From the NCBI GenBank assembly GCA_964035545.1, contig OZ037766.1, positions 16,978,722-17,042,721 on the forward strand: a stretch of 64,000 nt of DNA. The letters are read 5' to 3'. Source of the DNA: Bugula neritina (taxonomy: Eukaryota; Animalia; Bryozoa). A program made the translations under genes and the position numbers. Numbering within the stretch: position 1 is the first letter of the stretch; the number at the start of each line of letters is the position of its first letter. Positions 35,001 through 62,000 of the stretch are shown piece by piece. Under the pieces are notes generated by a model that worked only from the letters and a program-made list of their open reading frames with translations, searched no databases and was not told the origin of the DNA.

Positions 35001-38000
35001 AGCTACAATAGCCAGCTCGGTCGTACTAAAATCTAAATGATCTAAAACATAGATTGGAACACTTGCCTGTAGTTTATGAACGCACTGGCTCATCTGTGTT
35101 AACATGTCTACATACTTACAAACCTATATTACAAAACTAGGCTACCCTACTATAATCTAATATTTCTGGTAAAAATATTAGATAGTGGGGTAGCCTAGTT
35201 ATTTTTGTAATATAGGTCTGTAAGTATGTGAACATGTTAATACAGATGAGCCAGTTGTTATATTTTTCAGTATTGTGGGTTTCAGTGTGTAATCAAGTTA
35301 TTGCATTGCATGTAGTTTAAATCAATCTCGCAATTGTAGTTTCAGATAATAAGAATATATTTATACAAATAAGCACACAATAAAAACTCTACATCTACTC
35401 AGATACGTTACAACAACTCAGCACAGTGTCTCTAGTTTGCCTGCCTGCTAACAACTGCTCTACTACGCAAGAAGTCACAGTTCTAATAATAACTGACGAT
35501 TCCTATTGGAGGATTTGTTATCTCGGGTCATCTTCTATACACCCAATGACCCCGCATTACAGTCAGAAGAAAAGTAATGTTTTCCCCTTTTTAATTTTGA
35601 TATTAATTCATCGAGCCACGACACCGCCCCCACCAGCAGAAAGCCCACTTCCTGATAAAAATACCCATACAATAATACAAGACTAATGATAAAAAACAGA
35701 TACATAATATAAGACATACATACATCACGATACAAGAATACACTATTATAAGAACACAAGGTACACACACGTGACCAGATATAGAGAAAGAAGTAGGCTA
35801 GCTACGACGGCAACCAGCAAAAGAAGACAACAGGCATTTACAAAATCACAATGTCGTACACCGAGAGTTCCCAAGAAGGACAGGATTCACAGATAAGTCC
35901 GTGTTTATGAGGGTTATTGTCACTGCTTAGAGAAAGGATGCTTAGCTTGGCGGGCACACAGTCTCTGTTTTATTCGCCCTACAGAGTCTTTGAGCTGATA
36001 CAGCCCAGCGGTTGTATTTAATAAATCTGGGACCAACTGTGTAAAATCAGCCTGTAATCGGAAGAGTCGCTCCTCTACTGTGGCCAGGCGGGTCGGTCAT
36101 TCCGGGGGGAGGGGGGTGGGGGGAGTCATGGCTCTCTGGCGGGGTGATTTTGCCCCTTCCTCTACCTCCGCTAGAATCGGTTCTTCGGGAACGGGTATAA
36201 TTTCAGGCTTATCAGCTACTATGGAGGACTGCTGCCGAGCATACTTCAGTACGTGTTGAAATCTCGAGGTCAGGACGACTAGCACCAAAGCCTTCTTCAC
36301 CAGTGGCCGGATGAGTGTTAGGAATTCCGGATACATATCGACATCCACGACATAGTTTTCCCCGGGATAACATCCAGCAGCTCTATGCACAATGATTGGG
36401 TATGGGTAGAGATCGTCATGCCCGCATGGGCAGAAAGTCAATAAGAAGTGTGCATCTACATGCAGTCTTAGAGAACGGTGAGATGGCGGTCCTCGTTACA
36501 TGTTTGGCACCGGGTACTCTCCTTCGGTCTCCACGCGGCCTCTATCTTCTTTTAGGTTGCTGGCGGTTGGTCCCGTAACCTGGTGGTAGCAGGTCAAGTG
36601 TAACCTGAAAGAGTTCAACAGTGTTAGTAAGATATACTGAAGTGTGGCCGGCATTAGACAGCTTGACAGCTTCTTATTCAGTTAGGCACTCGTGAGAGTT
36701 ATGCTAGCAAATATTTGGAGGGGAACACACACTGCAATGGGAGATCTATAAAATCTCTAAGTCAATCTATGTCCCTACCACTATCCCCAGCTCAATTGAC
36801 TCAGTCGAGTCGGAGCCGAGTGATGCAATCTAGTTTCCATACCAAAAAAGAACATAGTTAACTCACCCCTCAATCCGGTATTGTAAGACATGCTGAATTT
36901 AGAATGGTTTTTACTAGTGACTAGTGGCACTCCTGCTCTTAACTGCACCAGCGTAAGAAAAAATCGAGCAACGTGGTTTGGGTGCGTGACTATGACTCCG
37001 CACACCCGGCGAATGAATTCTATTTGTAGTTCCGCTGATGTAAAGGTTGATATTTTCGTAGGGCTCACAACTCCCACAATTGCCCGATGGTTTTCCCATA
37101 CTGTTTCTTGCTAGACTTTCATCTGTGCCGCTTTGAATGCAGTCACATACGAAGTCTTTCAAATACGCCGGGGGGTTATCTAGTATGTTGTCCTCGTTCC
37201 AGAGGGAGTGGTGCACTCATCGGTGAACTATCAAGTTCCACTGGCGGCGTTTCCGGTCTCCTAGTAACCGTTTCCTCTCCGCTTTCTCCGGATGGAGCCC
37301 CTCCCTCCGTGGGAGTTTGCACTTCCGGATCCCGCTCGGGTTCCGGAAGTGATGGCGTCAAACCTGGGGCTGGAGATGGCGGACGCACTTCTGCTGGCGG
37401 AAGCGGTCGCTCGTCTCTTGCCAAATCTTCCTCCCGCGGAATGACCATCTCATATTCGGGTCCATGCCGCCGCCACCTATGCGTCGTTGTCTGCTTTCTT
37501 GGCTCCAACAATGGGGGAGCTTCTCTCACCGCGTCGGGGCTAGCCCAATACGGCTTCAAGCAAACCTCATTCTGGATAAACACCTGTTCTGAGCGCTTGA
37601 TCATGTAGGTATGGTTGGGCATAGCCTCGACTACCACGTAGGGTCCCACGAACTTAGGCTGTAATTTAGCCGCCTGTCCACGACGACTACGGTAATTAAC
37701 CATCCACACCCAATCTCCTGTTTGATAGAGGGGTGGTTCTTTGGATTCATCAAAACGAGGTAGAGAGTAGGCGTCCTGTATGGTCACGCTATTGGGCTTG
37801 CGGTAATCCACACAGAACCACTAACTTCCGTCTTTCTGCATTTTCCCGCTCCATGCGCTATGGGCTGGTTCTATGAGGCCGCGGTCCAGAAGATCCCGGA
37901 CTTGTCGGCTGACCTCTTTCTCCTTCTCCGGCTCCAACCTGCGCCTGGGTTGCCGTATAGGGACTGTCCCTGCAGCCAGTGGTACCTTGTGTCTGGCAAC

Positions 38001-41000
38001 TCGTGTCAGTCCCACGTCATCGTCTACGCTGCTGAACACATCACCGTATTCGCGTAGCAACTTCGCCATAGCCTGGCGTTCCTCGTTGCTCGCACAGCCA
38101 TCACAGGCTGTCTCATACAACTCCTTGATGTGTAGCGGGACGATCCCCGCCCTTTTGGCGGGCGCTGTGAGGGACCCTTCGTTGTATCTCCCAACGATGA
38201 TCCCACGTCCTCTTCCTGGACGGAGTGGAAACGGACCCAGCATGGACCCTGCCGGTAGCTTTACCGACTCCGCAAAGGGATTGAGGCACTGCACTAAGAT
38301 CTCTTCTTGCGCAGTCAGTTGGTTTAAACTGCTGGCAAGTTGGATTCTATCGTGCGCACCTTTCACTGCTCCCAATCCGGAGATCTGGCTATTGTTCACT
38401 ATGCAGTGAATAGTAGCTCGGGAGCGGCTCGGTATTGTACAGTTCCGTACTACCTGCATGCCTCCCCCTAGAGGACGGCTGAACTTGTCAACACGGATTA
38501 CATCGAAGAAAAACGACACGTTCCTATGCAATTCGTACAAAGTTATCTTCTCTTTGACGGCTGAACTAAAATGATAATTAATATGGTCAACTTTGAGTCG
38601 GTGTTCATGCACAATGACAATTTTTTTTAATTCTTCTGTCTCCATTTTTAATAGATTAAATTAATTAAATTTCCAAAATTTGAGTCAGCTTATTTGAAAT
38701 TAAAAAAAACATAAACCAATCAAAGCATAAAGTATTTTGTGATCGATAAATTAAAGCTTAAGAGTAATTTAAATTTTCAAAATGAAAACAGCCGTCAACT
38801 GATTTTTAGCTTGGGAATCCTTTGGCTTACGGAAAATTTTTATAAATTTAAGATGATTAGTAATTATTTTAAATAATAGCAGCCAAGATAAATATAATAA
38901 TTTAAATTGTTATGAGCCGAAGTACACGTTAGCGTAGATTGTAGCTTGTAATTATTGTTTACATCGAGTAACTATGTCACTAGCCTCCACATATGCTGAT
39001 TTCTGCCTCCGGCACAAAAGGTTTCGTTTGATTTAACCGAAAGAATCATTTCCATTATCCGCATAACTAATGCGAAGGAAATTTTTAATCAAAGTAGTCG
39101 TTCGATTGAATTTCCGGCTGCGGTTTTGCTTTGATGCAGCTAGTTCGATAGGGCGGATGAAAAAATCCATACGCATATTATGATAATGGAAACGTAGTGA
39201 TTCTAAAAGTTGAAAGGTTAATAGCTCTATAAAGAGTGGTTACAGCCAGCAAAACAGATGATTAATATGGGATTCATATGACAGCTGCCAGCTTTAACAT
39301 TGCTAATAACCAGAACGACAAAAACGCTTTGAAACTCTTTTTTTCTAATTTACCAAGATAACGATTTTCTAAAATTTTCTGAAGCTGCTAATATGTGTCC
39401 TTGTGCCAAAATATTTATTTCGGAAAATAAAATGAAACTCATGCTAGCAATAGTTTTCACACAAACCTCAAATTTCTACTGATTTTATGTGCTTTCTTTC
39501 CATCACAGAAACTCCCCATGTCCTGGGTGGGAGGGGACAACTTCAACTTATAAATACCCCTAGGGCCTAGAGGGACATGAGAAAAGGGTCTATACTACGT
39601 GAGATAATATGCCAAGTGTAAAATATACTATGTGACACAATATACTGTGTAACACAATGTACTATGTGACATAATATACTATGTGACATTATATTACTGT
39701 GTGACATAATGCTGTGTGTTTATACTTCATCAATGGCTTTTGTTTTGATCACTACTCTGATGCTCTAATTATGTCACTATAGTAACATATTATCTTATAA
39801 CTTGAGCTTTTTTAATTTATTATACATAAGTATAAGCTGTAGTTTTTAAGAAAGCAGCTGTTTACTTGAATCACTTCATTGCAGCTCTAATTGAAGTGAA
39901 GGTCTTGCCAAACCAGCCAGCTAAAGAGATGTACAAACTCATGGTGACACATTTGAAGAAGCGATACTATGATGTCACCGTTACTAAGTTTCAGCAGTCC
40001 TATGATCATAAGATGAGTTTACTCAGATTTGATCTTCCAGCAAAGGGTTCGTCACCTGTGTTGATGTTTTGCTGACAATTATTTGTGTAAAGAACGCTAG
40101 AAAATTCAACCAATGCTGTTTGACTCACTTAGTATTAAATAAAAAATAAGCAGATATTAGTAGATATTAAGTAATTATCAATGATATTTGATTTGGTTGT
40201 TATTGAATGATTGACATATAAGTTGCGGCAACAGACCTGAAAGCTTAACACAATTGATAGTGGAGGTTATGCACCTTTACTGGAACTCAAGTATTTGCTC
40301 TCCTTGCAGAGTTAACATTTTTTTGTTTAGAAGCCAAAGACTTGTTGAGTGAAGATCAGTGGCTGTTTTCAAAGGACCCAAACTCAAAGCTTAGCCTCAA
40401 ATCCCGGCATTCAGGTACAAGATTTTGCTTACATATGCTGTTATTTATGTTGAATTATTTCTATCAAGCCTAGAGAAGTGTACTGATTTAAAAAAAGCAA
40501 TTCTGGTGCTGTAGGGAAACGAATTAGAGTGGTGGTAAAAGACAAGAAGATCATGTTCCTAAGCAAAGAGATGCTAACAGATTACTTTAAACATCGTGGA
40601 CTGATTTCTTCAAATGATGGAATTCCTTCTTTTGTTAAACATAAAGCTATTCTTGTGTTGGAGACCTGCTCTGGTTTGTATTTTGTGTGTTGACTCAGTT
40701 CTTGATTTCTTTAAATTTGAACTTGATCAGTTTAATTATTAGTTTGACAACTGAAAAAAATGCAATTGATACTAAATATTATGTGTGTACATATACATGT
40801 GTGTGTTGTTTAGATAAGTTATGATTGAAACTGTTGAAGTTAAATTCAACTACCGGTTCATCAAACATTTTTTTAATTTGTAAAAATAACCTTTTCTTAA
40901 TTCACAGTTTTTCACTATTTAAAATTCTCTTCTTTCAGCTGCACGACTGATGGTTTCCATAAAGACACACTTACTGAAGGATGGTGTAGTCGTGGTTGCA

Positions 41001-47000: not shown

Positions 47001-50000
47001 GAAGTTGTCAACCAAGTTGTTGAAGGAAAGCCCATAGGGATTGCTGGCATAAAGGGCAATGTGGAGCAACTGGCACAGGATTTGACAAAGGCTATAGCCA
47101 AATATGAAACTGAGATTCGAGATGAAAAAGCAACCAAGACGGAGGTCCTTCCTAATGTATTTGACTACCAACTCAACTTCCTGAAACAGACAGACTTTTT
47201 CACAACACTTCAGAAAAAGCACAAGTTAAAAGCTGTGAGTGGAGATGTCCAGCAACGTGCTGTAGTTTTCACTGGTGTTCCTGCCAACATTGAAGCAGCA
47301 CAAAGAGAAACACTCAATTTGCTTCCACATCTGGCGGAATCGAAGGTGTCGGAACAGAAAAAACCTCTATTCTTGAAAGTTTTCAAAACGTCTATAGCTG
47401 AGAAGTCTATTAGACAAGAACTATTGGCTGCTGAGAAACTGCAAGCTGTTTGGACCGTGGAGAACCGAACTTTGAGTGTCTACTCTGTTGACAAAATTTC
47501 CGCTGTCAAAGCTCTGAAAATAATCAATGAAATCGTGTGGGAAGCTCAGTACCCACAAGATGGGGAGTTGGATGACCCGGAGAAAAAGATCCTCATCTCG
47601 GGAAAGTGGAATGACAAGAAAGCTGAACTCTGCAAGATGTTTGAACCTCTAGAGATAGTCAACTTCAGTGACAAACCTGGACTAGGTCTGGCTGGTCTAG
47701 CTCATAACAAAGGTCATGTTTTAGAAGAGATCTCATTTTTCTTTTCTAAAAATGTTATGAGAAAAGCCGTGTTTGATAAATTTCCAGAAAAGATCTTCTT
47801 TTTGGTCAAATATAACAAGGAAGTGTTTAAAGAGTTGGCGGGAAAGCACAATGTCAAGGTTACCATCCAGGCAGATGGTAAATCTGTTGCAATTGAAGGT
47901 ACTCGTGATGACAATGCCAACTTTGGTTGTAGTTTAGATAAACATCTAAAAGGTGTTTTTCATGGTTTCCACATAATAGACGACCGAGCCCGAGTTCAAC
48001 ACATCAATGATGATTCAGAGTTTTTAGAGACGGTCGGTTGGAGAAACAACTGCCTCGTTGTGAAGCATGAAGAAGGTGACGTGGAGACGGCTGTAGAACC
48101 TGAACCTCTGTCTGCAACTTCTCATCAAACTAGTTGTCTGTACAGTGTCACTCTGCCTTCTGGAACAGTTTGTGAAGTAAAGAGAGCAGACATAACGTCT
48201 CTTAGTCATGATGCTATTGTGAATGCTGCTAATGGTGATTTGAAGCATGGTGGAGGCCTTGCTTTGGCTATTGTTCAGAAAGGTTTGCTTCTTAAATATG
48301 TATTTCAAAATTTCCAGTATTGAGTCAATTTTGTTTGGTTTTTTTTCTAATTCGCATTGTGTGATTTATGTGTATGCGTGCGTGTGTGTAATATTCTTAA
48401 TATAAGCAATCATTTGATCCATGTGTCTTCCAGGAGGATCTGGTATTCAACAGGAATGTGATCATTATGTTCAAAAGAATGGCAAGCTGATGGAAGGAGA
48501 AGTTATGACCTCCTCACCTGGAAATTTGAGCTGCAAGAAAATTTTTCACGCAGTTGGCCCAAGATGGACGAATGGTGGAAATCATGAGGAGCCAACCCTC
48601 TTAAACTGTATTGATAATTGCTTCTTGGAGGCAGAAAAAGAGAAAATAAACTCCATTGCTATTCCTCCCATTAGTACCGGTATATTTAGATTCCCGATGA
48701 ACATGGCAGTGAAGGCCATAGTTGGAGCTATCGAGCAAAGAGAAATGAACAACGAATATCTGCCACAACTGATAAGTCTCGTAGACAACAAATCAGACAG
48801 TCTACAGCTTTTTGAAACTGAACTCCGCCAGGTGTTTGACAAAGCATCTTCACAAGAAGCTGCACCAGTAAAACCATCAAACTCAGCTAAGGCCGGACCA
48901 TCTAAATCTAGTTCTAGTTCAGGTACAAAGACTATATATTATATAGCTGTTCAGCTACAAAAACTATATATCATATACTAATTTAGCTACAAAGACTATA
49001 TATTATATACTAGTTCAGATACAAAGACTATATATTATATACTGGCTCAGATACAAAGACCATATGTTACAGATATCTTATGGTTCTATTTGTAGCAACT
49101 GGTAAATACACGATTACTGACAAGACAATAAAACTAGCATCTGGCATCAGTATTGAGTTGGTGTATGGTGACCTCGTGACATCACAGGTAGGTTGTTTCG
49201 GAATTTTCTACTGTATGTAATCTGGTTGTAGAAAAGTTACTAGTTACCATTAGTATGTCTCTACAGCCAGCTTCTAATCTGTGTTATGATCTATCTTATG
49301 TATCTGGATTGTTACTTAAACAAATCTTATCATTGCATAATGGACTACCACATAATTTTGTCCTTAGCCAGTAATAAAACTATTTTGTAGTGAACAATCA
49401 ATTATTTCACAACTTGTTTGTATGATAACAGCTTTATCTAAATTTACAAACAGCAATCGCCAAGTGGAAAGTTAGAATGATGGCATATGATACAATAAAG
49501 CCAAGTTTTTTTCTTCCAGTAAGATTTTTATGCACAATTAAAACAGAAAAAACCTCTTGCAAAATACAAAAAAGTCTTAGACTTCCTATTTTAGCTTTGT
49601 TAATAATTAGTACATTGGCATTTATCCCTAGTTTTTCAGCTGTGAAATATCAAAGACCTGCCCTCCAGCAATCCTTAATTTGACCTTTAAGAAAGCTGGA
49701 GTTATTTCTCTTTGTAAGGTTCCTTTCGTAGATTTAATTGCATCTTTTGGGCAGACCTAGTATTTAAAGCCAACACTTGGTCACTTAGTGTTACCAAATT
49801 TAGTGTAAAACTCCTAACTGGGACGTTATAGGTTTCAATTATAGCATGGTTGTCAAGAGAATACATATATTATGCCATATGTATGTATTTGTGTGTGCGT
49901 GTGTAGTGGATTGATCAGCAACAAGCATAAAACAGTATCCTTAACTTCTGGATTTATTGCTTTGTCTTTGACGTTAACTCTGTATAAGAAATATAGTTGC

Positions 50001-53000
50001 ATGCTGTACAAAAACATATGCATAAGTAACTTTTAAATATATGATATCAACAAAAACAAAAAATTCTTAAATTATAACAACACTTGCAAATCTCAGCTCC
50101 TCTGAAACTTTTCCTGGCAAATGAATTTAATAACAATTATAATACAAACTAAGGAGTTTCATTTACAGCCAAAAATAAAATCACAAGAAGCCGACAACAG
50201 CCCACCAAACTGCAAAAGCTAGCAGTATAGTTTTAGTAACATCTTGGCAAACAGCCAAGATTATCTCCGTGGCACAGTGTGTGTGTGTGTGCGCGCGCGT
50301 GGGCCTATGTGCGCGTGGGCCTATGTGCGCGTGGGCCTATGTGCGCCTGGGCCTATGTGCGCCTGGGCCTATGTGCGCCTGGGCCTATGTGCGCCTGGGC
50401 CTATGTGCGCCTGGGCCTATGTGTGTGTTTATGTGCATATAAAAGGGCTGGGTGCAAAATTCATGACTCTAATGGACAATACATGCAGCAGATTGCTGGA
50501 AAAGTTCTTTTAAAATAACTTTGGTATCTCTTTTCAACAATTTTGCTCAAACTAAACTATCAGTTATTTTGTAGGAGGATACTCTGGTAAACTCTGTGGG
50601 AAATGACATGAATCTGTCTAATGGTAAAGTTGCTGTTGCTCTGTCCAACAAAGCTGGGCCACAGCTGCAGGCAGCATGTAAAGCTCTGGCACCTATTAAA
50701 GCAGGCGACGTGAAGGAGACAGATGGGTTCAACTTGGCCTGTAAGAAAGTGCTGCACTGCAACTGTCCACGGTGGCAGGATCCTCAGGCTATACCAGTGA
50801 GTCACTAGTCATTGTCTTGCATTGACTTTAACTCTATTAATTTGAGATGTTACCTAATTTTTGAGAAGATTTTCAACCTCATGATTTTAGATCTATAACT
50901 CAGGTTCTCAACTCCAACACAGCATCATCACTTTTGTCAGCCATATTTGTATAGTCCTATAATATACATGATACTACGCTATACTATAAAATACTATACT
51001 ATATACTATACTACATACTATACTACTATACTATATATAACTATACTATATACTACACTATATCATACTATACTATACTACACTACACTATGCAATATGT
51101 GACTAACTGACTATACTACATGTATATACTATACTGTGCTGTGCTGTGCTGTACTCTATAATATACTATGCTATATTATACCATACTTTACTATATACTA
51201 CTCGTATATAGTATAGAATAGAGTAGTGTAATATAGTGTAGTATATATACTATATACTACTCGTATATAGTATATATACTACACTATATTACACTACTCT
51301 ATTCTATAATATACTACACTATACTATATACTATACTATACTGTACTATATACAATACTATACAGTAATATACACTACAATATATACTATGTGTGTGTCA
51401 GCAATCCCTCGTGTGACGAGTATGATGTCTGCTTGCAAGCCCTAGTCTGTGCCGTGATCCGTAATCCGTTCCAGTTCGAAAATCCGTAAACTCCTACTAG
51501 AGGTTGTGAGTTCTGAGGTGACTCACAAGCCCAATTCGAGATCGGCATAATTTGCCACAGTGAGGACAAATGTTACTAGAGTCAGTCACTGGTGGGTGTG
51601 TAACAGAGCATAACTCCCTGCTTTTCCTTAACAACCGTTTGTGCTCTCGTTTTTGGCGTTGTTGTTGTTCAAAAATCGCTGTCCCTTGATGCACAACAGT
51701 TCTCCAATTTTTTCTGTCCAAGGCCTGAACTTCCCAGGTCTGTGGTCGAATGAAACACTGCTTAAGGCTTTCGTGTAGAGTGTCTCTATACCTTTTCCTC
51801 TGACCACCCTGTGAGCGATTTCCAGTGTTCAGCTCAGAGTACATGATCTTTTTTGGTAGCCGGTTATCATCCATTCTTACCACATGGCCAGACCACTTCA
51901 GTTGTCTCTTCACAATCATGGTAGTAATACTTGTAGTTTGAGCTTTATCCAGGACACTGTTAGTAGTCTGCCTGTCTTGCCATTTGACTCCGAGGATTCG
52001 CCTGAGACTGCGGTTGTGAAATTTCTCGAGGGACAGCAGGTTGTGGCTGTAGGTTACCCAAGTTTCAGAGGCATAAAGTAGTGTCAGGAGAACAATGGCT
52101 TTGTATACTTTTAGTTTGGTCTGTCTGTATATATCCTTGTTGTTGAAAACGCGTGTTTGCAGCCTCCCAAATGCGGAGCTGGCGGCCTGGAGTCTTCGGT
52201 TTATTTCAGCATCAATGTTTGCTTTAGAGGATAGGCAGCTACCTAAATAGTTGAAGGTAGTGACTTGGTCTAATATTTGGTCTCCCACCTTGAGGGAAAA
52301 ATCCTCATGTCTTTCAGTATTCGGGTGTGGTTGGCACATTACTTGCGTCTTCTTGGCATTGAGTGTTAGACCAAGAGAGGTGTATGCTGTATTGAATGCT
52401 GTGAGAGCAAGTTGAAGTTCCTCCTCGGAATGAGCCATGATCATGTTATCATCAGCATACTGCAGTTCATGGATAGCCTCGGTAGCTGTCTTCGTCTTAG
52501 CTCTGAGACGTCTGACATTGAAAATATCATTAAATCTATATCTGATTCTTACTCCAGATGGCATACATTCACTCACTAGTTGAAGTACAGCAGTGAGGAA
52601 AATCGAGAACAATGTAGGTGCTATCACACATCCCTGTTTTACTCCTGTGTTCACAGGAAACTCCTTAGAGTGGTCTCCATCAACTAATACTGATGCCTTC
52701 ATGTCATCATGTAAGATGCGAATGATGGTAATTAATTTGTCGGGGCATCCAATCTTGCCTAGCACTTTCCACAGCGTTGGTCTGTGAACTGTGTCAAAGG
52801 CTTTCTTTAGATCGATGAATGCCATAAACAGATCACGGTGCTGCTCTAGGCATTTTTCTTGAATCTGCCGAGCAGCAAAAATCATATCCACAGTTCCTCG
52901 GTAAGGTCTGAAGCCACATTGGCTCTCTGGTAGGCATCTCTTTGTCAATTGGCCAAGTCTAAAACTAACTATTCTCACCAGAAGCTTTCCAGCAATGGAT

Positions 53001-56000
53001 AGCAGAGAGATACCCCTATAGTTTCCACAATCGGCTCTGTTACCCTTCTTGTAAAGAGTTACAATATTAGCATCCTTAAGATCAGGATGAAGTGATTCTT
53101 TTTCCCAAATCAGCTGAAAGAGTTCCAGCAATTTTCTGTTCAATTCTAGCCCACCACCTTTAAAAATCTCTCCAGGTATTCCATCCGGTCCGGCAGCTTT
53201 TCCTGACTTAGTCATGGATAATGCTTTCTCAAGTTCGTCAATCGTTGGGGGTTCGGCTAGGTGGGTCAGTATTGACAGTTGTGGCAGACATTCTAAGGTC
53301 TTCTCATCCACCATAGTGTCTTGGTTAAGCAGCTCTGAGAAATGTTCAGCCCATCTGCCTTTGATCTCATCTTTCCCCTTATGTATTGTGGAACCATCTT
53401 TGGAAGCTATTGGCCCACATCCTCCAAAAATTGGGCCATACAATCTCTTCGTAGCGGAAAAGAACTCTTTGCTACTGTTTGTCTCAGCAAGTCTCTGAAG
53501 TTCCTCAGATTTTTGGATCCACCAGTCATTTTTTATTGTCCTTATTCTCGCCTGTACTTTCCCTCTCATTTTATGATAATGTTCCCTTTTTTCCACATTT
53601 CTATAGTCTTGGTGCCATAAGCTGAAAGCATGGCGTTTCTTCCTCATGAGCTCGTTTATTTCTTGTTCGTTGTCATCAAACCAATCTTCATGTTTTCGTT
53701 CTGGTTTACCCAGGGTTGAGTGGCATGTTTTCAAGATTGAATCTCTCAGAACTTCCCAGCTGCCATGAGTAGAATTTATGTCAATATCTTGGATATTCTC
53801 TGTAAGCTCACTTTGGAAGCTCTGCTTTATTTCTGGCTGGTTGAGCAGCGATAGATTTATTTTTGTCTGCTTTCTTTTCCTGTTCATTTGTTTTGGATGA
53901 ATACATATGTTCATCTTTGCCAGAATCAGTCGATGGTCTGTCCAGCAAGCATCAGATAGGTCCATAGCTCGGGTTATACGCACATCCTGCACATCCCGTT
54001 GTTTGACAATGATGTAGTCGATAAGGTGCCAGTGGCCAGATCTGGGATGTCTCCATGAGGTCTTGCGTCGGTCTTTCTGTCTAAAAAGAGTGTTTGTGAT
54101 TGCCAAGGAGTGTTCAGCACATTTGGTGAGCAGCATTTCCCTATTGCTATTTAGCTTCCCAGTCCCATATTTACCAATTATCTTTTTCCACACATGGTGA
54201 TCTTTTCCAACCCGAGCATTAAAATCTCCAAGGACCATGATTTTCGCACTCTTGGGGATCCCTGATAGAACCATATCTAGATTTGAGTAGAACTGCTCCT
54301 TTTCCTGATGATCAGCAAGCAATGTCGGTGCATATGCTGAGATCAATGTTGCTTTCCTGTTGCGGCGTAGGTTTAGTTGGAGAGTCATCATCCTGTCGTT
54401 GATTCCCACTGGTAGCTGGTCGAGTTTCCTCACAACCTCATTCTTGATAGCAAAACCAACCCCATGAACTCTCTGTTCATCGGCCGGTTTCCCTCTCCAG
54501 AAAAAAGTGTACCCACCACCAATTTCCGTGAGCTGCCCTTCATCAGCTAAGCGAGTTTCCTGAAGGGCTGCTATGTCTACATTTAGTCTTCTGAGTTCAC
54601 GAGCTATGAAAGCCGTTCTTCTCTCAGGTCTGTTTGGTTTATCATTGTCCATCATTGTCCGTACATTCCAGGTTGCTATGTTCATTTGTATTTTCTGACC
54701 GCAAAGAGGTGAACCCGCTGGACGCGGTAATCCAGCCAGGATGAGTTGGGAGCAGACTATGTTTGGGGCACCTTTTCTAGCCCTCTCCTCTGATTGAGGT
54801 GAGCAGAGTGGGTTCTAAAAAGGACTGCTCAGTCATAGAGATCACTACCGAACAACCATACTGCTCCCTGTCCTAAGTTGAGCGACTGATAAATCTCTAC
54901 CGCCTACGTGCTGGTTTGTAACTGGAAACTTCCAGGCTTCACTGCCCTGTTCCCGTCGCTACGCCCCAATCGCCGCAAGGCTTGAGGAGGGTTGCAAGCA
55001 GAAGCTGTGCGTGGTGTAGAGCATTGTCGCACGAAACGATACTCTGTAAGCTTGGCTAGGCATGTCTGGATCCAGTGGCAAGGGAGCCTCGACGACTGGA
55101 AAACATGCCTAGTTGCAGTGAATGGCCGTTGATTCATGGAATTCATTTGCCCTTTCAGTTTCCTGACTATATACTATACTATACTATACTATAATATACT
55201 ATGCTGTATAGTATAGCAGGATTTTGATAAACCCTCAAACTCTTTTTGTAATCTAAATCTGAATTGCTTACAATAATATAATTGAGTTGAGGTGCATCGA
55301 TGCTGCATATGGTTAATCAGTTTATCTTTTCTTCTCAGTTTCCTTTATTAATCTTATGCTTGAAACCTGGTAAAATGTACAATGCAAGTAAAACACGTTG
55401 AATAAACTAAATATTATAATTGCAGATGTGTGTAGAAATAGGTACAATACAACAAGAACTTTAGAATTAACCTGATAAAAACTACAGTATAAGTTAACGT
55501 GCTAAACTAGCCAAATATTATAATTAAGTAATTGCTGCGGTAATACTTGTAGCACTAGGCTAGCTCACTACTATTACTACTAGCTGTTAGTTCAAAGTTT
55601 GCACCAACATCTGGGTTGCCAAAGCATAAAGTCACAGCCAATGGGCGGTAGGCTGCGCGCTGCTTTGGGGTAATTATCTAATCAACAAATAAGCATAACG
55701 ATAACTAGCAGTCGTAGTGCTGGAATCAAGAGATGTAGTATAGTGTATATGTAATGTAGTATATGTAGTAATATATAGTATATATGTAATGTATATGTAT
55801 TTAGTATATGTAATATAGTGACCAATTAAAATGCAACGCTATGCTAAATACTCGCTTGACTATTAGATCACCATTACAAGTATACTATATTATACTACAC
55901 TATACTACACTATAAGGGTAGGGGGGGGGGCACAACGATCTTGGGGGTACAAAAAGCCGGTCAAATTGTGAGAGAACTTATTGACTTAAAGTTGTAATTT

Positions 56001-59000
56001 CTTTTTAATAAAAAGGTATTGACATAATTTTTAAGCCATTGTAGTTTCAACACTTGCAGAGCATACCTGTTAAAGAGGTGCGTCAAAAACTGTTTTTACC
56101 AACTTTTTGTAAATTTTTTAAGATGTAGTTAAAGCTTTATAACTTTTTACACTGAAAGGTAACAAGCCTAGATTTTACTGATGTTGTTGCCATTGCTTGT
56201 CTCTATATTGCTTAATTAGAATAACAGCAAACTCTAAAATAAATTTACCTTGAGCCACATTTATTTTCAACTTGGCCACACGGGCACAATGGACCACCTG
56301 ATCCTTGCACCCTGATCACTGTTATTAGTTTGTTTGCCCAAAAAGTTAGATGAAATGTTAATAAAATCTATAGATATAGCCATTTTTGATCCTTTTGTAA
56401 AGTATCAAAGACATTATGGTAAGACTACCAAACTACAAGATGAAGCTCCCCTAATAGGCCTATATACATTTGGTGAGGTTATGGCTTTGCCATTTTATAC
56501 ATTATACAAAACACTCTGCTGTTGCTACTAATTGATAGTCATGATATTCATTATACATTATATCATTGAGGGAGTATACATGTATTTGACTAAAATAAAT
56601 TTTGATTTGCACATTCCCTCCGCCCTCCCCTTCTGCATTCCAGTCACAAACCTCAGCCATGCACCTTAGCTACAGTTCATAGAAAAAAGTCCACTCGAAA
56701 TTTTGTAGTACATGTTACTAAAGTTTTTTCTGATGAGAGTTCTTGTGAAGTGGAAATAGAAAAAACATTTTTATTTCGAAACAGTAATATTAGTCATGGA
56801 CTCACTATGTATTTATAACCAACTTGAAAGTATTTAGGGTTATATATTACGGATATTTTGTAGTTACTGAAGCAGATTGTGATGAACTGTCTGAACAAAG
56901 CTGCTAGTAATGGCCATGTTTCTATAGCGTTTCCTGCTTTGGGTACGGGTAACTTGGGCTACCCTCCGGCAATATCAGCTCAGCACATGATAGAAGCTAT
57001 TATGGACTATTCTAAGGGAAATCCTAAGAGTAGTATCACTCAGGTCAAGGTTATTGTCTATCACTCAGATGTCAACACAAAGAAGGTTCAGTAGTTTATC
57101 ACCAATTTACAGATTTCTGTTGAATTTCAAAATGTTAACTTATTTTCAGGGTGCAGAAACACAGGAATAATGCTTTCTAACTTTTTATTTTTGAGTTTTA
57201 AATTGTTTTGCTGCCAAATGCTATGGGGAACCTTGAAAATTGCAAAATCAGTGATAACTTGAAAACAAATTAATGAAATGGAATGCTGTCAATTTTTTGT
57301 TCAGGGGTTTGAAAATGAGATGGCATTGCTGACAGCTGGTAACTCAATACAGACGAATCTACAGCCTAAGGTTGTGGGTTTCGATTCTGCAAATCATGTG
57401 GGAACTAGCATGAAAGGTAAAACTTTTCTAATGCTTTAAAATAAAAATTCTATGCAAATATTCAAATGCCCAGAACTGTACAACCCTGCTATTACATATT
57501 TGGGTTATATTTTTAATCTTTCCATGGGTTTATACATTGTCCATGGTTGAATAACATCTAAACTAAAGAAATAAAGAATTTATTTTAAGAGTTCATTATG
57601 TTCAAGAAGACTGGAATCATGTTAGAAATTGATTGAAGTGTTTTGAGAAATGATGATTTAGCTTGTGAAAATGCACCAATTTTATGACTTAGCTAATTGT
57701 ATTATAGCATTTGATTGTCCTCTCCATAGACATTTCTCCAGGTCTGTGTAAAAGAGCTCGCAAGGGGTTTCAACAGTCCTTATTTAGATTATATGTTATA
57801 TCAACTACAAATACTATATATTATATACTAGTTTAGCTACAAAGACTATATATTATGTACTAGTTTAGCTACAAAGAATATTATATATTATATATCAGTT
57901 CAGCTACAAAGACTATAGATTATATATTAGTTCAGCTACAAAGGCTATATATTATATGCTAGTTCAGCTACAAAGACTATAATATATTATATACCAGTTT
58001 AGCTACAAAGACTATATATTATGTACTAGTTTAGCTACAAAGAATATTATATATTATATATCAGTTCAGCTACAAAGACTATATATCATATACTAGTTCA
58101 GGTACGAAGATTATTTATTATATAAAAGTTCAAATACAAAGACCATATAATACAGATATCTTATGGTTCTACTTGTAGTAACTGGTAAATACACGATTAC
58201 TGACAAGACAATAAAACTAGCATCTGGCATCAGTATTGAGTTGGTGTATGGTGACCTCGTGACATCACAGGTATGTTGTTCTGGAATGTTCTACTGTAAG
58301 TTATCTGATTGTAGAAAAGTTACTAGTTACCAGTAGTATGTCTCTACAGCCAGCTTCTGGTCAGTGTTATGATCTATCTTGTGTATCTGGATTGTTACTT
58401 AAACAAATCTTAGCATTGCATAATGTTATGATCTATCTTGTGTAGCTAGTTTGTAGAAAAAGGCCAAAGCTATACATGATTCTCATGTTAAACTAGCAGC
58501 AAATTTTTGGGCTGTTTTTTATGTTTCTCTGGATTTAGATATGTGACTTGAATCCTAGACTATCAGCTCTTTTGTAGGAGGATACTCTGGTAAACTCTGT
58601 GGGAAATGACATGAATCTGTCTAATGGTAAAGTTGCTGTTGCTCTGTCCAACAAAGCTGGGCCACAGCTGCAAGCAGCATGTAAAGCTCTGGCACCTATT
58701 AAAGCAGGCGACGTGAAGGAGACAGATGGGTTCAACTTGGCCTGTAAGAAAGTGCTGCACTGCAACTGTCCAGGGTGGCCGGGTCCTCAGACTATACCAG
58801 TAAGCAATTAGTCATGGTCTTGCATTGACTTTATTTATCTAAAATATTTACCCCTTCTGGGATTTGAACCGCATACCATTAGCTACTAAGCTTAAAATGC
58901 TAACCATTATACCGCAGAGGTTAGTGGGTTGTTTCAACACTGCAAACTCTAGTTACTCTCAAAATTTATTAATTTAGCATGTTACCTGACTTTTATGATG

Positions 59001-62000
59001 AATTCATGTTCAAACTTATATAAATTTAGATGTAACTTTTGACAGATCTATAAATTAGATCCAAGTAAACATTTTGATGCTGAGGGCTCGACATCATCAC
59101 TTTTGCCCGTAACATCTGCAGTCTTGTACTGTACTACAGTGACATCTGCCGTCCTGTAATATACTAAAGTGACATCTGCAGTCCTGATGTGAACACTTTT
59201 AATTGAGCAACTTTTGTAACCCTTAGTGTGCCGCCTACTCAGTATAATCTCCATGTTAGTCAAAACAGAGGTTTCATCTCAGTTAGCGCTATTTTTTATT
59301 ATGGTACAATATATAGCAATATACCCTTATGTATCTATATAACTGTTGCACTGATTTCTAAACATGAAATAATAGTTATTATGAATTATCTGGAATAATA
59401 TTCTAATTTTCACGGATTTGTGTAGGACAAAAATAGTAATGCATTAATAATAGACATTATCTTTAATTAATACTTATTAACGAAATATTTTTTCAAACAA
59501 CAAGAAGTAGGCTATAGAAGTATTGAAGCACTGTTACTGTACATAGCTTCTTATTATGTGTGTTGCTAATGGCTTCTTTGCCTCCTATTACATTTGCTAA
59601 ATAACAAACAGTTGATCTAAATTTATTTAAATATACCTACATATATTTTAGTAACATTCAAATAAATTGCACATAGAATACATCTATTATACCAAAATAA
59701 ATAAATAGCATCTAACTGGGAAGCATCTATCTGGAATGACAACAACACAAAGTCTAGTCCTAAGTGTTCGTATTTAAAATTTTATTGACTTTGTCTTCTC
59801 TATTTAACTCACTTTTTGATGGAAAACTGTGAATACAGACTTCTTAGTTCTATCATAAAATAGAAAATTTGACTAACTTGCAATTAAACAGAGTTTTGGA
59901 AAAGTTACAAAAAGCTAAGATTACTGGCTTGACTTTCATTATCATTCACATTGTTATATTCAATTCATGATAGTCATCAACTCACTATGCATTTATAACC
60001 AACTTGTAAGTTTTTAGGGTTATATATTACGAATATTTTGTAGTTACTGAAGCAGATTGTGATGAACTGTCTGAACAAAGCTGCTAGTAATGGCCATGTT
60101 TCTATAGCGTTTCCTGCTTTGGGTACGGGTAACTTGAACTACCCTCCAGCAATATCAGCTCAGTACATGATAGAAGCTATTATGGAGTATTCTAAAGGAA
60201 ATCCTAAGAGTAGTATCACTCAGGTCAAGGTTATTGTCTATCACTCAGATGTCAACACAAAGAAGGTTCGGTTTCTTAATTTCTGTCCTACAGTTTGAAG
60301 AGATATTAATTGGCTTCGAGACACAATCTGTTTTCACTTTCTGAACAACATCTTAGCTGTAATCAAAATAGTTCTCCTGGGGCTCTTAACAGGACTTTAT
60401 TCAGCAAAAGCTAAGCAATAACTTAAAATGGACAGCATTTATAAAACGGAAGTACTGCATAGCTCAAGTCCAAATTTTGTTTGAATGCTATTGAATTACA
60501 ATAAAATATAATATGTATAGTATAAGATTATATGTTAACAAACAATTACATAATACATAACTATACTGCTTTTACAATAAAGCCATTAACACCACATTAG
60601 CAAAACTGAAAGTATTTTTTGCAGGGTTTTGAAGATGAGATAACACGGCTTTCAAATATTAAACCAGGGAAAATGAATCTACAGCCTAAGGCTATAGAAC
60701 CATGTTCTGGAGGATATGAAGCCTCGGGCACAAAAGGTAACCTTCACATTCCAGTGTAGTTTGTGTGCAAATTTTTTCTATCTACTTGTCTAGTCTAGTG
60801 CTGCGACTTTTAGTCTCAAAACAATTGTGAAATGTATTTGGGAAAAATTATTTTGGAAAGTAATTCAAGTGTTCGGAAGAATTGCTGAAATCAAAGAAGA
60901 AATAGTCAGTGAAAATGCAACAGTTTTATGTCACAGCATTATTTTTATATATTACTCGCTTTATCCTCAGGTTTACATAAAGGGGCTCTCATAGGGTGGC
61001 TGGCTGTTCACAATACAAATGTTAGAATTGTTAAAGGAGATATCACTGATTTCAAAGCTGATGCGTTGGTTAATAGTACAGATGGAGTGCTCAGTATAAC
61101 AGGTACTAGTGTGTAGTAGACAAAGTATGACTCTGTAGTAGATGGAGTATGACTCTGTAGTAGATAGAGTTTTACTATGTAGTATATTATAGAGTATGAC
61201 TCGGTAGTATTATATAGAGTATGACTCTGTAGTAGATAGAGTATGTCTACTTCTCTATTTCCTTTGTATACTTACATGAATAAAGCCAGTTTGATTTTGG
61301 TGTGAAGTTTTTTCAGATAGGCTCCAAGTTAAAAGTAATTTATGTTCATTTAGATTGTGTCTATTTGCTGTTGAAAATTGACATAAGACTATGAGATGCA
61401 TACACTATAATAGCTTATTCAGACGGTCAACGAATTGGACGAATAGCGGACCAAAATGGCACGACAAATGCAAATTTTGTTAGTTTTGGATCACATAATC
61501 AAACCACGGCGTCAATTGTGCCAAACTAGCGTCCTTCGATTGGTCTGACAGTAGAAGAGTTTGTTCATTTTGGATCACGTTATCGACTTTTCAAAATTTT
61601 GTTGGAGCTTGACCCAGCAAGGTTTCAGCTGACGATTTTTCTGATTGCACTCCATTGGCTTATTTCAAAAAGCAAAAAGTGCGGGCATAATTCACATGGC
61701 AAACAAGTTGCTCAAGCGGCATTGTTTGTAACTAAATTAAATCATCAATATTTTAGTACTTTTAATAATAATAGATAATAATTATTCAAAATAAACAAAT
61801 TTGTAGGAAGCATATTATTTTGCTGGTCAGCAGCACTTTAAAATTATTTCAAGCAGTTTTCACGACAGAAATACGTTTTAATACAAAGATGCCCATAAGC
61901 AACTGAGTCAATGTGCACAAGGGTATGACTAAAATGGGTGGCCACCTGGTGTCGCGGTCCATGACACCCATTTTAGTCATGGGGGGGGGGTTTGACTAAA

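What the first reader, a model, noticed from the sequence alone, without database searches (positions are those of the whole stretch)
48915..60736. Tandem-duplicated macrodomain-2 module with homogenised domain exons and skewed amino-acid changes
Seen: a phase-1/1 four-exon cassette (92/222/222/112 nt, 216 codons) occurs twice. The three domain exons differ at only 12 of 536 nt by my count (3 synonymous, 9 non-synonymous giving 8 aa changes). The linker exon differs at 44 of 112 nt, and intron interiors do not align and carry different TEs. Changes cluster in the [16 protein letters not shown] loop and include G>N in the GTGNLGYP loop. Known: that loop contacts ADP-ribose in macrodomains, and macro-PARPs (PARP9/14/15) are fast-evolving antiviral genes. 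Inference: an older duplication kept alike by exon-local gene conversion while binding-surface residues diversify, giving an expandable ADP-ribose-reader array in an invertebrate immune PARP.
Basis: partly seen in the sequence, partly recalled or inferred. Interest (0 to 1): 0.8.

Follow-up and report, generated by a model that had tools for sequence, protein, structure and literature searches.

The report
Duplicated PARP14 macrodomain kept alike by conversion
A PARP14-like gene of a marine invertebrate carries its second ADP-ribose-binding macrodomain twice in a row, and the two old copies are kept about 98% alike by repeated copying between their exons, a well-documented case of a known evolutionary process rather than a new mechanism.

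Summary
Two 92/222/222/112-nt cassettes exist. The domain exons differ at 12 of 536 nt and the linker exons at 44 of 112. Intron interiors do not align and carry different transposons.

The gene is PARP14-like: macro1, macro2A, macro2B, macro3, then a PARP catalytic domain 8.5 kb past the window.

The main inference, an old duplication homogenised by exon-centred gene conversion, is now well supported:
- A single-cassette paralog (P) groups with copy B at the linker and at unconverted intron, but A and B group together in the domain exons.
- Contigs from a related lineage (R) hold orthologous A and B cassettes with their own introns and linkers.
- In the domain exons, 8 informative sites unite the two copies within a lineage and none unite orthologs. 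Synonymous divergence is 0.03 for A-B and 0.07-0.13 between orthologs.
- A second paralog (Q) shows the same two-cassette, exon-limited identity.

An RNA contig splices A3, linker A and B1 in series, and DNA depth excludes a haplotype artefact.

The adaptive part is only partly supported. The nonsynonymous share is raised (omega about 0.8 against 0.11-0.15) but not above 1. The loop G/N difference is not fixed across lineages, and Gly is the state shared with human PARP14. This is a new variant of a known kind.

The parts
48418..48922 (+). second exon of macrodomain 1; donor inferred at 48922|GT, phase 1
   Evidence: Pfam Macro E 5e-24. Reading frame and GT read directly; 85% identical to paralog P. 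Splice not verified by RNA.
48914..49069 (.). 32-nt minisatellite (4.9 units) that fills the intron before cassette A exon 1
   Evidence: The same repeat precedes B exon 1 and the single cassette of paralog P.
49096..49187 (+). cassette A exon 1 (92 nt, phase 1 to 0), N-terminal strand of macrodomain 2A
   Evidence: 1/92 nt different from B exon 1.
50575..50796 (+). cassette A exon 2 (222 nt), first half of macrodomain 2A
   Evidence: Pfam Macro E 6e-13. Best solved relative is human PARP14 macrodomain 2. 5/222 nt different from B.
51500..54814 (-). LINE retrotransposon ORF (1105 aa) inside intron 2 of cassette A
   Evidence: Pfam RVT_1 and Exo_endo_phos. Absent from the orthologous contig L040 of the related lineage.
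56864..57085 (+). cassette A exon 3 (222 nt), second half of macrodomain 2A with loop motif GTGNLGYP
   Evidence: Pfam Macro. Aligns to human PARP14 MD2, which has GTGNLGFP. Spliced to linker A in an RNA contig.
57305..57416 (+). linker exon A (112 nt, phase 0 to 1), unique in the genome and fast evolving
   Evidence: 44/112 nt different from linker B. No other genomic match. RNA joints 57085|57305 and 57416|58179. Ortholog in L040 differs at 10/112 nt.
57801..58149 (.). 32-nt minisatellite (10.6 units) in the intron before cassette B exon 1
58179..58270 (+). cassette B exon 1
   Evidence: RNA joints from linker A and to B exon 2.
58578..58799 (+). cassette B exon 2, first half of macrodomain 2B
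   Evidence: Pfam Macro E 6e-12. B1 to B2 splice seen in run X7.
59270..59755 (.). dispersed ~470-nt repeat in intron 2 of cassette B
   Evidence: more than 40 copies at 70-87% identity across the genome
60044..60265 (+). cassette B exon 3, second half of macrodomain 2B with loop motif GTGNLNYP
60625..60736 (+). linker exon B (112 nt), the ancestral-type linker
   Evidence: 19/112 nt different from the linker of paralog P, against 44/112 from linker A. Spliced to macro3 exon 1 in run X9.
60971..61102 (+). first exon of macrodomain 3 (approximate borders)
   Evidence: The rest of macro3, a weak WWE match and the PARP catalytic exons lie in L013, past the window end.

Best explanation
The window holds the middle of a PARP14-like mono-ADP-ribosyltransferase gene. 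Its macrodomain-2 module, a four-exon cassette, was duplicated in tandem long ago, giving macro1, macro2A, macro2B, macro3 and a PARP catalytic domain. Both modules are transcribed and spliced in series. After the duplication, the introns and the inter-module linker exon diverged freely. Repeated non-reciprocal exchange (gene conversion) between the two cassettes keeps overwriting the three domain exons and a few tens of bases of flanking intron. These tracts are probably confined to the exons because they are the only long stretches of homology left. The result is concerted evolution: the two macro2 modules of one genome are more alike than either is to its true ortholog in a sister lineage. 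Shown here: the anatomy, serial splicing, the age of the duplication, and the within-lineage homogenisation. Inferred: the molecular mechanism (conversion rather than another homogenising process), loss of one cassette in paralog P by unequal crossover, and any functional consequence of having two reader modules.
For: Family: Pfam Macro on E2 and E3 of both copies. The best solved relative is human PARP14 macrodomain 2. Macro1, macro3 and a PARP catalytic exon (41 bits, cut-off 26.7) lie on the same strand. Real tandem copies: only A, B and paralog P match closely in the 216-Mb assembly. In DNA run X1, unique parts inside and outside the duplication have the same contig depth (91-123) and the shared E2 part has 185. 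Serial use: an X9 contig joins A3|linker A|B1, X7 joins B1|B2, and X9 joins linker B|macro3. Old duplication: linker A differs from linker B at 44/112 nt, while linker B differs from P at 19/112. Site patterns in the linker are B=P 34, A=B 9, A=P 5; in the domain exons they are A=B 51, B=P 7, A=P 3 (chi-square p 7e-11). The first 40 nt of intron 3 differ by 60% between A and B but 20% between B and P. A Poisson test excludes a young linker A (p 8e-17). Cross-lineage test: L040 is the ortholog of cassette A, with A-type introns, linker A and the minisatellite. L021 and L022 are orthologs of cassette B. In E2 plus E3, 8 informative sites are shared by the two copies within a lineage, 0 by orthologs and 1 crosswise. 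With P as outgroup, shared derived states occur in both lineages. dS is 0.033 for refA-refB, 0.069 for refA-RA and 0.131 for refB-RB. Exon-centred: synonymous A-B differences are 3/123 against 30/319 in the flanks (p 0.014). Recurrence: paralog Q has two cassettes that are 97-98% alike in the exons, with identity ending within a few bases of the exon borders and linkers of 94 and 103 nt.
Against: No conversion event was seen directly, and no population sample was analysed. The RNA evidence that linker A is included is one low-depth contig (depth 6.9) from a run whose RNA nature is only guessed, although its GT..AG-bounded joints argue for spliced RNA. A1|A2 and A2|A3 splicing was not covered. 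The related-lineage contigs are short-read metagenome assemblies, and L040 lacks the first 45 nt of A3, which may be a misjoin. That the duplication predates the split from paralog P rests on rate arguments and on a loss in P that left no trace. The upstream edge of the A3 block (56791) coincides with a transposon end in A, so that boundary is an insertion edge and not a conversion-tract edge.
Confidence: 0.85

Rival explanations
1. A recent tandem duplication, with intron interiors replaced quickly by insertions and deletions and linker A diverging fast. No gene conversion is needed.
For: A-B exon dS is only 0.03. The introns of A are full of insertions (LINE, second transposon, microsatellites) that the related lineage partly lacks. 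Linker A does evolve fast: omega about 1.7 between lineages, from 10 differences.
Against: Both cassettes, with their distinct introns and linkers, are present in the related lineage, which is more diverged (dS 0.07-0.13) than A is from B. Linker A carries 34 unique changes where at most about 5 are expected. Alignable intron next to A3 and before A2 is far more diverged between A and B than between B and P. Shared derived sites within each lineage stand at 8 against 0.
Confidence: 0.03
2. Assembly artefact: A and B are two allelic haplotypes wrongly placed in tandem.
For: High exon identity with different introns could also describe diverged haplotypes of a heterozygous marine invertebrate.
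Against: Unique parts of both cassettes have the same DNA contig depth as flanking single-copy sequence (about 91-123), and heterozygous sites run at about 45 per allele. A spliced contig runs A3|linker A|B1. The related lineage has the linker A side followed by the minisatellite, as in the tandem layout. Paralog Q has the same layout.
Confidence: 0.01
3. The two cassettes are mainly mutually exclusive or optional alternative modules. Each is phase 1 to 1, so skipping either keeps the frame, and most proteins would carry only one macro2.
For: Phase symmetry of the cassette. Only one contig documents serial inclusion.
Against: That contig shows linker A spliced to B1. No skipping joint (A3 to linker B, or linker A to macro3) appeared in any of the four runs. 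Contigs drop rare isoforms, so skipping is not excluded.
Confidence: 0.06
4. Homogenisation is by repeated unequal crossing-over, or a re-duplication of a segment, rather than by short-tract conversion.
For: The single cassette of paralog P looks like the product of an unequal crossover. The minisatellite before E1 is a plausible substrate.
Against: Crossing-over would carry the introns and the linker along and change copy number. Here three separate exon-centred blocks are alike, while the DNA between them keeps position-specific (orthologous) identity across lineages.
Confidence: 0.05

Closest known systems
Vertebrate PARP14 (macro-PARP, ARTD8) and its partial duplicates PARP9 and PARP15
   Same: Tandem macrodomains followed by a PARP catalytic domain. 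E2 and E3 match human PARP14 macrodomain 2 best, and copy A has the loop-2 motif GTGNLG[Y/F]P in common with it. The family is known for positive selection in the macrodomains and for gene and domain gain and loss (PMC4038475). Three macrodomains plus PARP is taken as the ancestral metazoan form (PMC10221186).
   Different: Here macrodomain 2 is present twice inside one gene, giving four macrodomains, and the two copies evolve in concert. PARP9 and PARP15 arose by partial gene duplication into separate genes. I found no report of an intragenic macro2 duplication or of conversion between macrodomains; the library searched is not exhaustive.
Concerted evolution of paralogs by interlocus or intragenic gene conversion
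   Same: Paralogs are more alike within a lineage than orthologs are between lineages. Identity is a mosaic with discordant trees along the sequence. Conversion is confined to conserved coding stretches. General treatments: PMC2720389, PMC3924837, PMC3966226.
   Different: The unit is a domain-encoding exon cassette within one gene, not whole genes. The same pattern recurs independently in a distant paralog (Q) in the same genome.
Tandem duplicated exon arrays such as Dscam
   Same: Tandem exon duplicates that encode a binding-domain part, in a gene class tied to immunity (PMC3236188).
   Different: Dscam exons are spliced in a mutually exclusive manner. Here the one informative contig shows serial inclusion.

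Membership tests
macro-PARP, PARP14-like | two or more tandem macrodomains | tested here: met
   Pfam Macro on macro1 (E 5e-24), both macro2 copies and macro3
macro-PARP, PARP14-like | C-terminal PARP catalytic domain in the same gene | tested here: inconclusive
   PF00644 at 41.3 bits (cut-off 26.7) on the same strand, 8.5 kb past the window, with weak PARP14 KH-domain and WWE matches between it and macro3. No transcript linking it to the macrodomains was examined.
macro-PARP, PARP14-like | WWE domain before the catalytic domain | tested here: inconclusive
   PF02825 at 14.3 bits, below the cut-off of 21.1, on a single exon piece
macro-PARP, PARP14-like | duplicated module corresponds to macrodomain 2 | tested here: met
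   Best PDB matches are 3vfq, 5o2d and 3q71, over PARP14 MD2 residues
macro-PARP, PARP14-like | mono-ADP-ribosyltransferase triad H-Y-hydrophobic | not tested
   The motifs LWHGT, GTYFA and IFVVF were read by eye in the L013 ORFs. No alignment to a reference catalytic domain was made.
concerted evolution by gene conversion | duplication older than the lineage split used for comparison | tested here: met
   L040 carries A-type introns and linker A; L021 and L022 carry B-type introns and linker B
concerted evolution by gene conversion | paralogs within a lineage closer than orthologs, with shared derived substitutions | tested here: met
   8 concerted, 0 orthology and 1 cross site. dS 0.033 (refA-refB) against 0.069 and 0.131 for the ortholog pairs. 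In lineage R the paralog dS (0.093) lies between the two ortholog values.
concerted evolution by gene conversion | discordant genealogy along the repeat (mosaic) | tested here: met
   Domain exons group A with B; the linker and unconverted intron group B with P
concerted evolution by gene conversion | conversion tracts seen as polymorphism or in pedigrees | not testable with these tools
   Only the one read-laying run returned contigs, not reads
ADP-ribose-binding macrodomain (reader) | intact phosphate-binding loop 2 | tested here: inconclusive
   Copy A has the motif of human MD2. Copy B and P have Asn for the last Gly. Other paralogs have R or A at this site. Binding was not assayed.
positively selected immune gene | dN/dS above 1, or site-model support | tested here: not met
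   Omega 0.8 for A-B, 0.36-0.64 among the other copy pairs, 0.11-0.15 against P. Raised, but not above 1, and based on few changes.

The most novel reading that the evidence does not exclude
The two macro2 modules are functionally distinct ADP-ribose readers, and conversion between them acts as a generator of new loop combinations. Variants in the phosphate loop (Gly or Asn) and in the hypervariable loop after CNCP are shuffled between modules and lineages and sorted by selection from pathogens. This would be a small diversity-generating reader array, found twice (this gene and Q) in one genome.
Probability: 0.15. Interest if true: 0.65.

Novelty: new variant of a known kind. Interest (0 to 1): 0.45.

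Why it matters
Macro-PARPs are among the fastest-evolving antiviral genes of vertebrates. Their history is told in terms of whole-gene and partial-gene duplications from an ancestral three-macrodomain PARP14. This locus shows another route: an intragenic duplication of the reader module, held in concerted evolution in two lineages and in two paralogs. Trees of individual macrodomains can therefore mislead about the age of such duplications. The locus also offers natural pairs of near-identical macro2 domains that differ at a phosphate-loop residue and in one adjacent loop, which are ready-made material for binding-specificity experiments. As a process it is textbook concerted evolution, so it does not change concepts.

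Tried and rejected
1. Is linker A a copy of an exon upstream of cassette A, that is, a shifted duplication unit? No upstream or other genomic match was found.
2. Was linker A imported from another paralog? It is unique in the genome.
3. Is there a haplotig elsewhere in the assembly? There is none; only A, B and P match closely.
4. The metagenome scan for relatives of E3 returned only 38-50% relatives, because near relatives are withheld there. The useful contigs came from the word search plus contig look-up.
5. Is the transposon in B intron 2 tRNA-derived? ARAGORN found no tRNA.
6. Is copy A the faster copy? Unique changes are 7 (A) against 3 (B), not significant (p 0.34).
7. Did paralog P donate Asn to copy B? 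P-specific bases 3 nt before and 10 nt after the Asn codon are absent from B, so a simple tract does not fit.
8. Does orthology link the linkers of Q to linker A or B? They are too diverged to tell.
9. Earlier notes of the scan held nothing beyond this finding itself.
All protein searches were exon by exon and by reference, so there is no structure model of either macro2 copy. The large representative-protein search was not used because the family was already clear.
Full report
**Observation.**
A repeat search and BLAST of the region against itself give three A-B blocks and nothing else:
- 48916-49342 with 57996-58425, 90% identical
- 50552-50830 with 58555-58833, 95%
- 56791-57089 with 59971-60269, 96%

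- A: 49096-49187, 50575-50796, 56864-57085, 57305-57416.
- B: 58179-58270, 58578-58799, 60044-60265, 60625-60736.
- All exons have AG/GT borders. The phases run 1|0, 0|0, 0|0, 0|1, for 648 nt per cassette.

The domain exons differ at 1+5+6 = 12 of 536 nt. These are 3 synonymous and 8 nonsynonymous changes in complete codons, plus the first base of E1 in a split codon, giving 8 amino-acid differences. The linker exons differ at 44/112 nt.

Intron 2 of A carries a LINE with an open 1105-aa endonuclease/reverse-transcriptase frame. Intron 2 of B carries a ~470-nt repeat with more than 40 genomic copies.

**What the gene is.**
- E2 and E3 of both copies hit Pfam Macro.
- Their best solved relatives are the macrodomain-2 part of human PARP14 (3vfq, 5o2d, 3q71).
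- Upstream lies macrodomain 1. Downstream lie macrodomain 3, weak PARP14 KH-domain and WWE signals, and a PARP catalytic exon at 41 bits, all on the same strand. The catalytic exon lies 8.5 kb past the window.
- The architecture is therefore macro1, macro2A, macro2B, macro3, PARP. Three macrodomains plus PARP is considered the ancestral metazoan macro-PARP (PMC10221186).

**Are the two copies real and used?**
The whole 216-Mb assembly has only three close matches: A, B and a paralog on another contig. There is no haplotig.

- In DNA run X1, contigs unique to the A side, unique to the B side and outside the duplication all have depth 91-123. The contig over the shared E2 sequence has depth 185. 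Heterozygous sites run at about 45 per allele. This fits two diploid copies and does not fit two alleles placed in tandem.
- A contig of run X9 joins A3 to linker A (57085|57305) and linker A to B1 (57416|58179).
- X7 joins B1 to B2, and X9 joins linker B to macro3 exon 1.
- No skipping joint was seen.

The evidence for serial inclusion is one low-depth contig, so minor isoforms are not excluded. A1|A2 and A2|A3 were not covered.

**An outgroup inside the genome.**
Paralog P (C4, locus L012) is 82-88% identical and has one cassette. Three-way comparison gives opposite genealogies in different parts of the cassette.

| Region | A=B, P differs | B=P, A differs | A=P, B differs |
|---|---|---|---|
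| Domain exons | 51 | 7 | 3 |
| Linker exon | 9 | 34 | 5 |

- The difference between the two rows gives chi-square p 7e-11.
- The first 40 nt of intron 3 are 60% different between A and B but 20% different between B and P.
- The 3' part of intron 1 is 55% different (A-B) against 28% (B-P).
- If A were as young as its exons or flanks suggest, linker A should have at most about 5 unique changes. It has 34 (p 8e-17).
- No other sequence in the genome could have donated linker A.

So the cassette duplication is much older than the 2% exon divergence, and P's cassette is of the B type. P most simply lost the A-type cassette by unequal crossover. This last step is inferred and left no trace.

**Within the alike blocks.**
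The A-B flanks differ at 30/319 nt (9.4%), the exons at 12/536, and synonymous sites at 3/123 (p 0.014 for synonymous sites against flanks). B-P synonymous divergence is 0.41, so synonymous sites are free to change. The exon cores were therefore homogenised more recently than their edges, as expected for repeated tracts anchored in the only long homology left. One boundary is not a tract edge: 56791 is the end of a transposon inserted in A.

**The decisive test: a related lineage.**
A word search with B3 and with the open frame around linker A found fragments in two JGI metagenome samples. Their contigs could be fetched.
- L021 and L022 are collinear with cassette B, its introns (92-95% identical), linker B and macro3.
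- L040 is collinear with cassette A: A-type intron 1 and intron 2, without the LINE, the A-type start of intron 3, linker A (10/112 differences) and the minisatellite.
- Runs X7 and X9 belong to this lineage. They share its linker B changes and an 18-nt linker duplication, and their E2 and E3 variants match L021 and L040.

So both cassettes predate the split, and introns and linkers group by position. The domain exons do not.
- In E2 plus the 177 nt of E3 present in L040, 8 informative sites unite the two copies of one lineage, 0 unite orthologs, and 1 is crosswise.
- With P as outgroup, shared derived states occur in both lineages.

| Comparison | dS |
|---|---|
| refA-refB | 0.033 |
| RA-RB | 0.093 |
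| refA-RA | 0.069 |
| refB-RB | 0.131 |
| Any copy against P | 0.48-0.62 |

(All.)

The site pattern is concerted evolution. The distances agree only in the reference genome, where the two copies are closer to each other than either is to its ortholog. In lineage R the paralog distance (0.093) lies between the two ortholog distances.

**Recurrence.**
A distant paralog, Q (C4:1078001-1098000, about 43% identical in E3), has the same layout.
- It has two cassettes about 2 kb apart.
- One block of 425 nt (E1, a 77-nt intron and E2) is 97.2% alike, and one of 254 nt (E3) is 97.6% alike.
- Identity stops within a few bases of the exon borders.
- Its linkers are 94 and 103 nt and poorly alignable.

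Among three related macro-PARP genes the number of macro2 modules is thus 2, 1 and 2.

**The adaptive claim.**
- A-B has 8 nonsynonymous and 3 synonymous differences (omega about 0.8). Against P the values are 17.5:38.5 for B and 21.5:37.5 for A (omega 0.11-0.14). In Q the two copies differ by 4:10. Fisher tests give p about 0.015 (B against P), 0.04 (A against P) and 0.05 (Q).
- Among the four copies of the two lineages omega is 0.36-0.79.
- Constraint is therefore relaxed, or selection partly positive, on recent branches, but nothing exceeds 1 and the counts are small.
- The loop after CNCP varies in every copy: [40 protein letters not shown], and PQWQGPQTIP in P.
- By residue numbers this loop corresponds to V1093-S1104 of human PARP14 MD2. 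That paper's loop labels run against residue order. As I read it, this is the loop described as lying beside the phosphate-coordinating loop and not directly involved in ADP-ribose binding (PMC9477163).
- The G/N site is in the phosphate loop (human G1138). Its distribution is Gly in reference A, in both copies of the related lineage and in human, and Asn in reference B and in P of both lineages.
- Reference B shares three states with P (E3 offsets 93, 94, 152) that the other three copies lack. P-specific neighbours are absent from B, so these look like unconverted remnants of the older B-type sequence rather than a recent import.
- The difference is not maintained across lineages, so it gives no support for long-term selection on it.
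- Other paralogs carry R or A at this site.

**Verdict.**
The functional and adaptive part remains a hypothesis. The finding is a clean, now cross-checked, example of concerted evolution of a duplicated domain cassette in a PARP14-like gene. It is a new variant of known kinds, not a new mechanism.

**Limits.**
- There is no population sample and no binding or expression data.
- The related-lineage contigs are short-read metagenome assemblies, and L040 lacks the first 45 nt of A3.
- The organism is coded in the tools and was not identified.

Noticed in passing
G000:C4:1078001-1098000 (L014+L015, minus strand): A second macro-PARP paralog (Q) with its own tandem pair of macro2 cassettes. The exons are 97-98% alike, the 77-nt intron 1 is identical, the other introns are unalignable, and the linkers are 94 and 103 nt. 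The copies differ by Sd 10 and Nd 4.
   Followed up: yes
G000:C4:1128000-1139536 (L012, L018): Closest paralog P has a single macro2 cassette of the B type. It has the same minisatellite before E1 and a PARP catalytic hit at C4:1139396. It probably lost one cassette by unequal crossover.
   Followed up: partly
window 51500-54814 (minus strand): A LINE with an uninterrupted 1105-aa endonuclease plus reverse-transcriptase frame in intron 2 of cassette A. The orthologous contig L040 of the related lineage lacks 51282-55169, so the insertion is young.
   Followed up: partly
window 48914-49069 and 57801-58149; L012 about 961-1163: A 32-nt minisatellite makes up the intron before exon 1 of every cassette (4.9, 10.6 and about 6 units). 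Its units contain GT and CAG strings. It is a possible substrate for unequal exchange.
   Followed up: no
window 61112-61245; L012 3521-4240; L021 2837-3257: A 22-nt tandem repeat just after macro3 exon 1. It has 5.8 units here and is expanded to roughly 30 units in paralog P and about 19 in the related lineage.
   Followed up: no
window 55926-56788: A sequence that also occurs, inverted, downstream of macro3 in the related-lineage contigs (L021 7119-7596, L022 5381-6263), so it is probably a transposon. Its end marks the upstream limit of A-B similarity before A3.
   Followed up: partly
L040:3591-3655: In the related lineage's cassette-A contig, the first 45 nt of exon A3 and its acceptor are replaced by unrelated sequence. 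This is either a metagenome misassembly or a real lesion of that copy.
   Followed up: no
L021:2331-2460 and the X9 contig at 60725|60969: Linker B of the related lineage carries an 18-nt internal tandem duplication (repeat of GGAGGATATGAAGCCTCT). It is seen in both the genomic contig and the RNA contig, so linker length is variable.
   Followed up: partly
G000:C291:17-451 and C31:21436-21771: Strong PARP catalytic matches on small contigs, interrupted by 7-8 in-frame TAA/TAG codons. This suggests sequence from an organism that reads TAA and TAG as sense (for example a ciliate), that is, contamination in the assembly.
   Followed up: no
window 27500-38700 (minus strand): Long open frames that look like gag, reverse transcriptase and integrase of an LTR-type retroelement, upstream of or within the 5' part of the gene. 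They were not checked against Pfam.
   Followed up: no
window 58673: The synonymous A at B2 offset 95 is read as G in every contig of X1, X2 and X7. The reference base may be a minor allele, or the variant may have been dropped by contig assembly.
   Followed up: no
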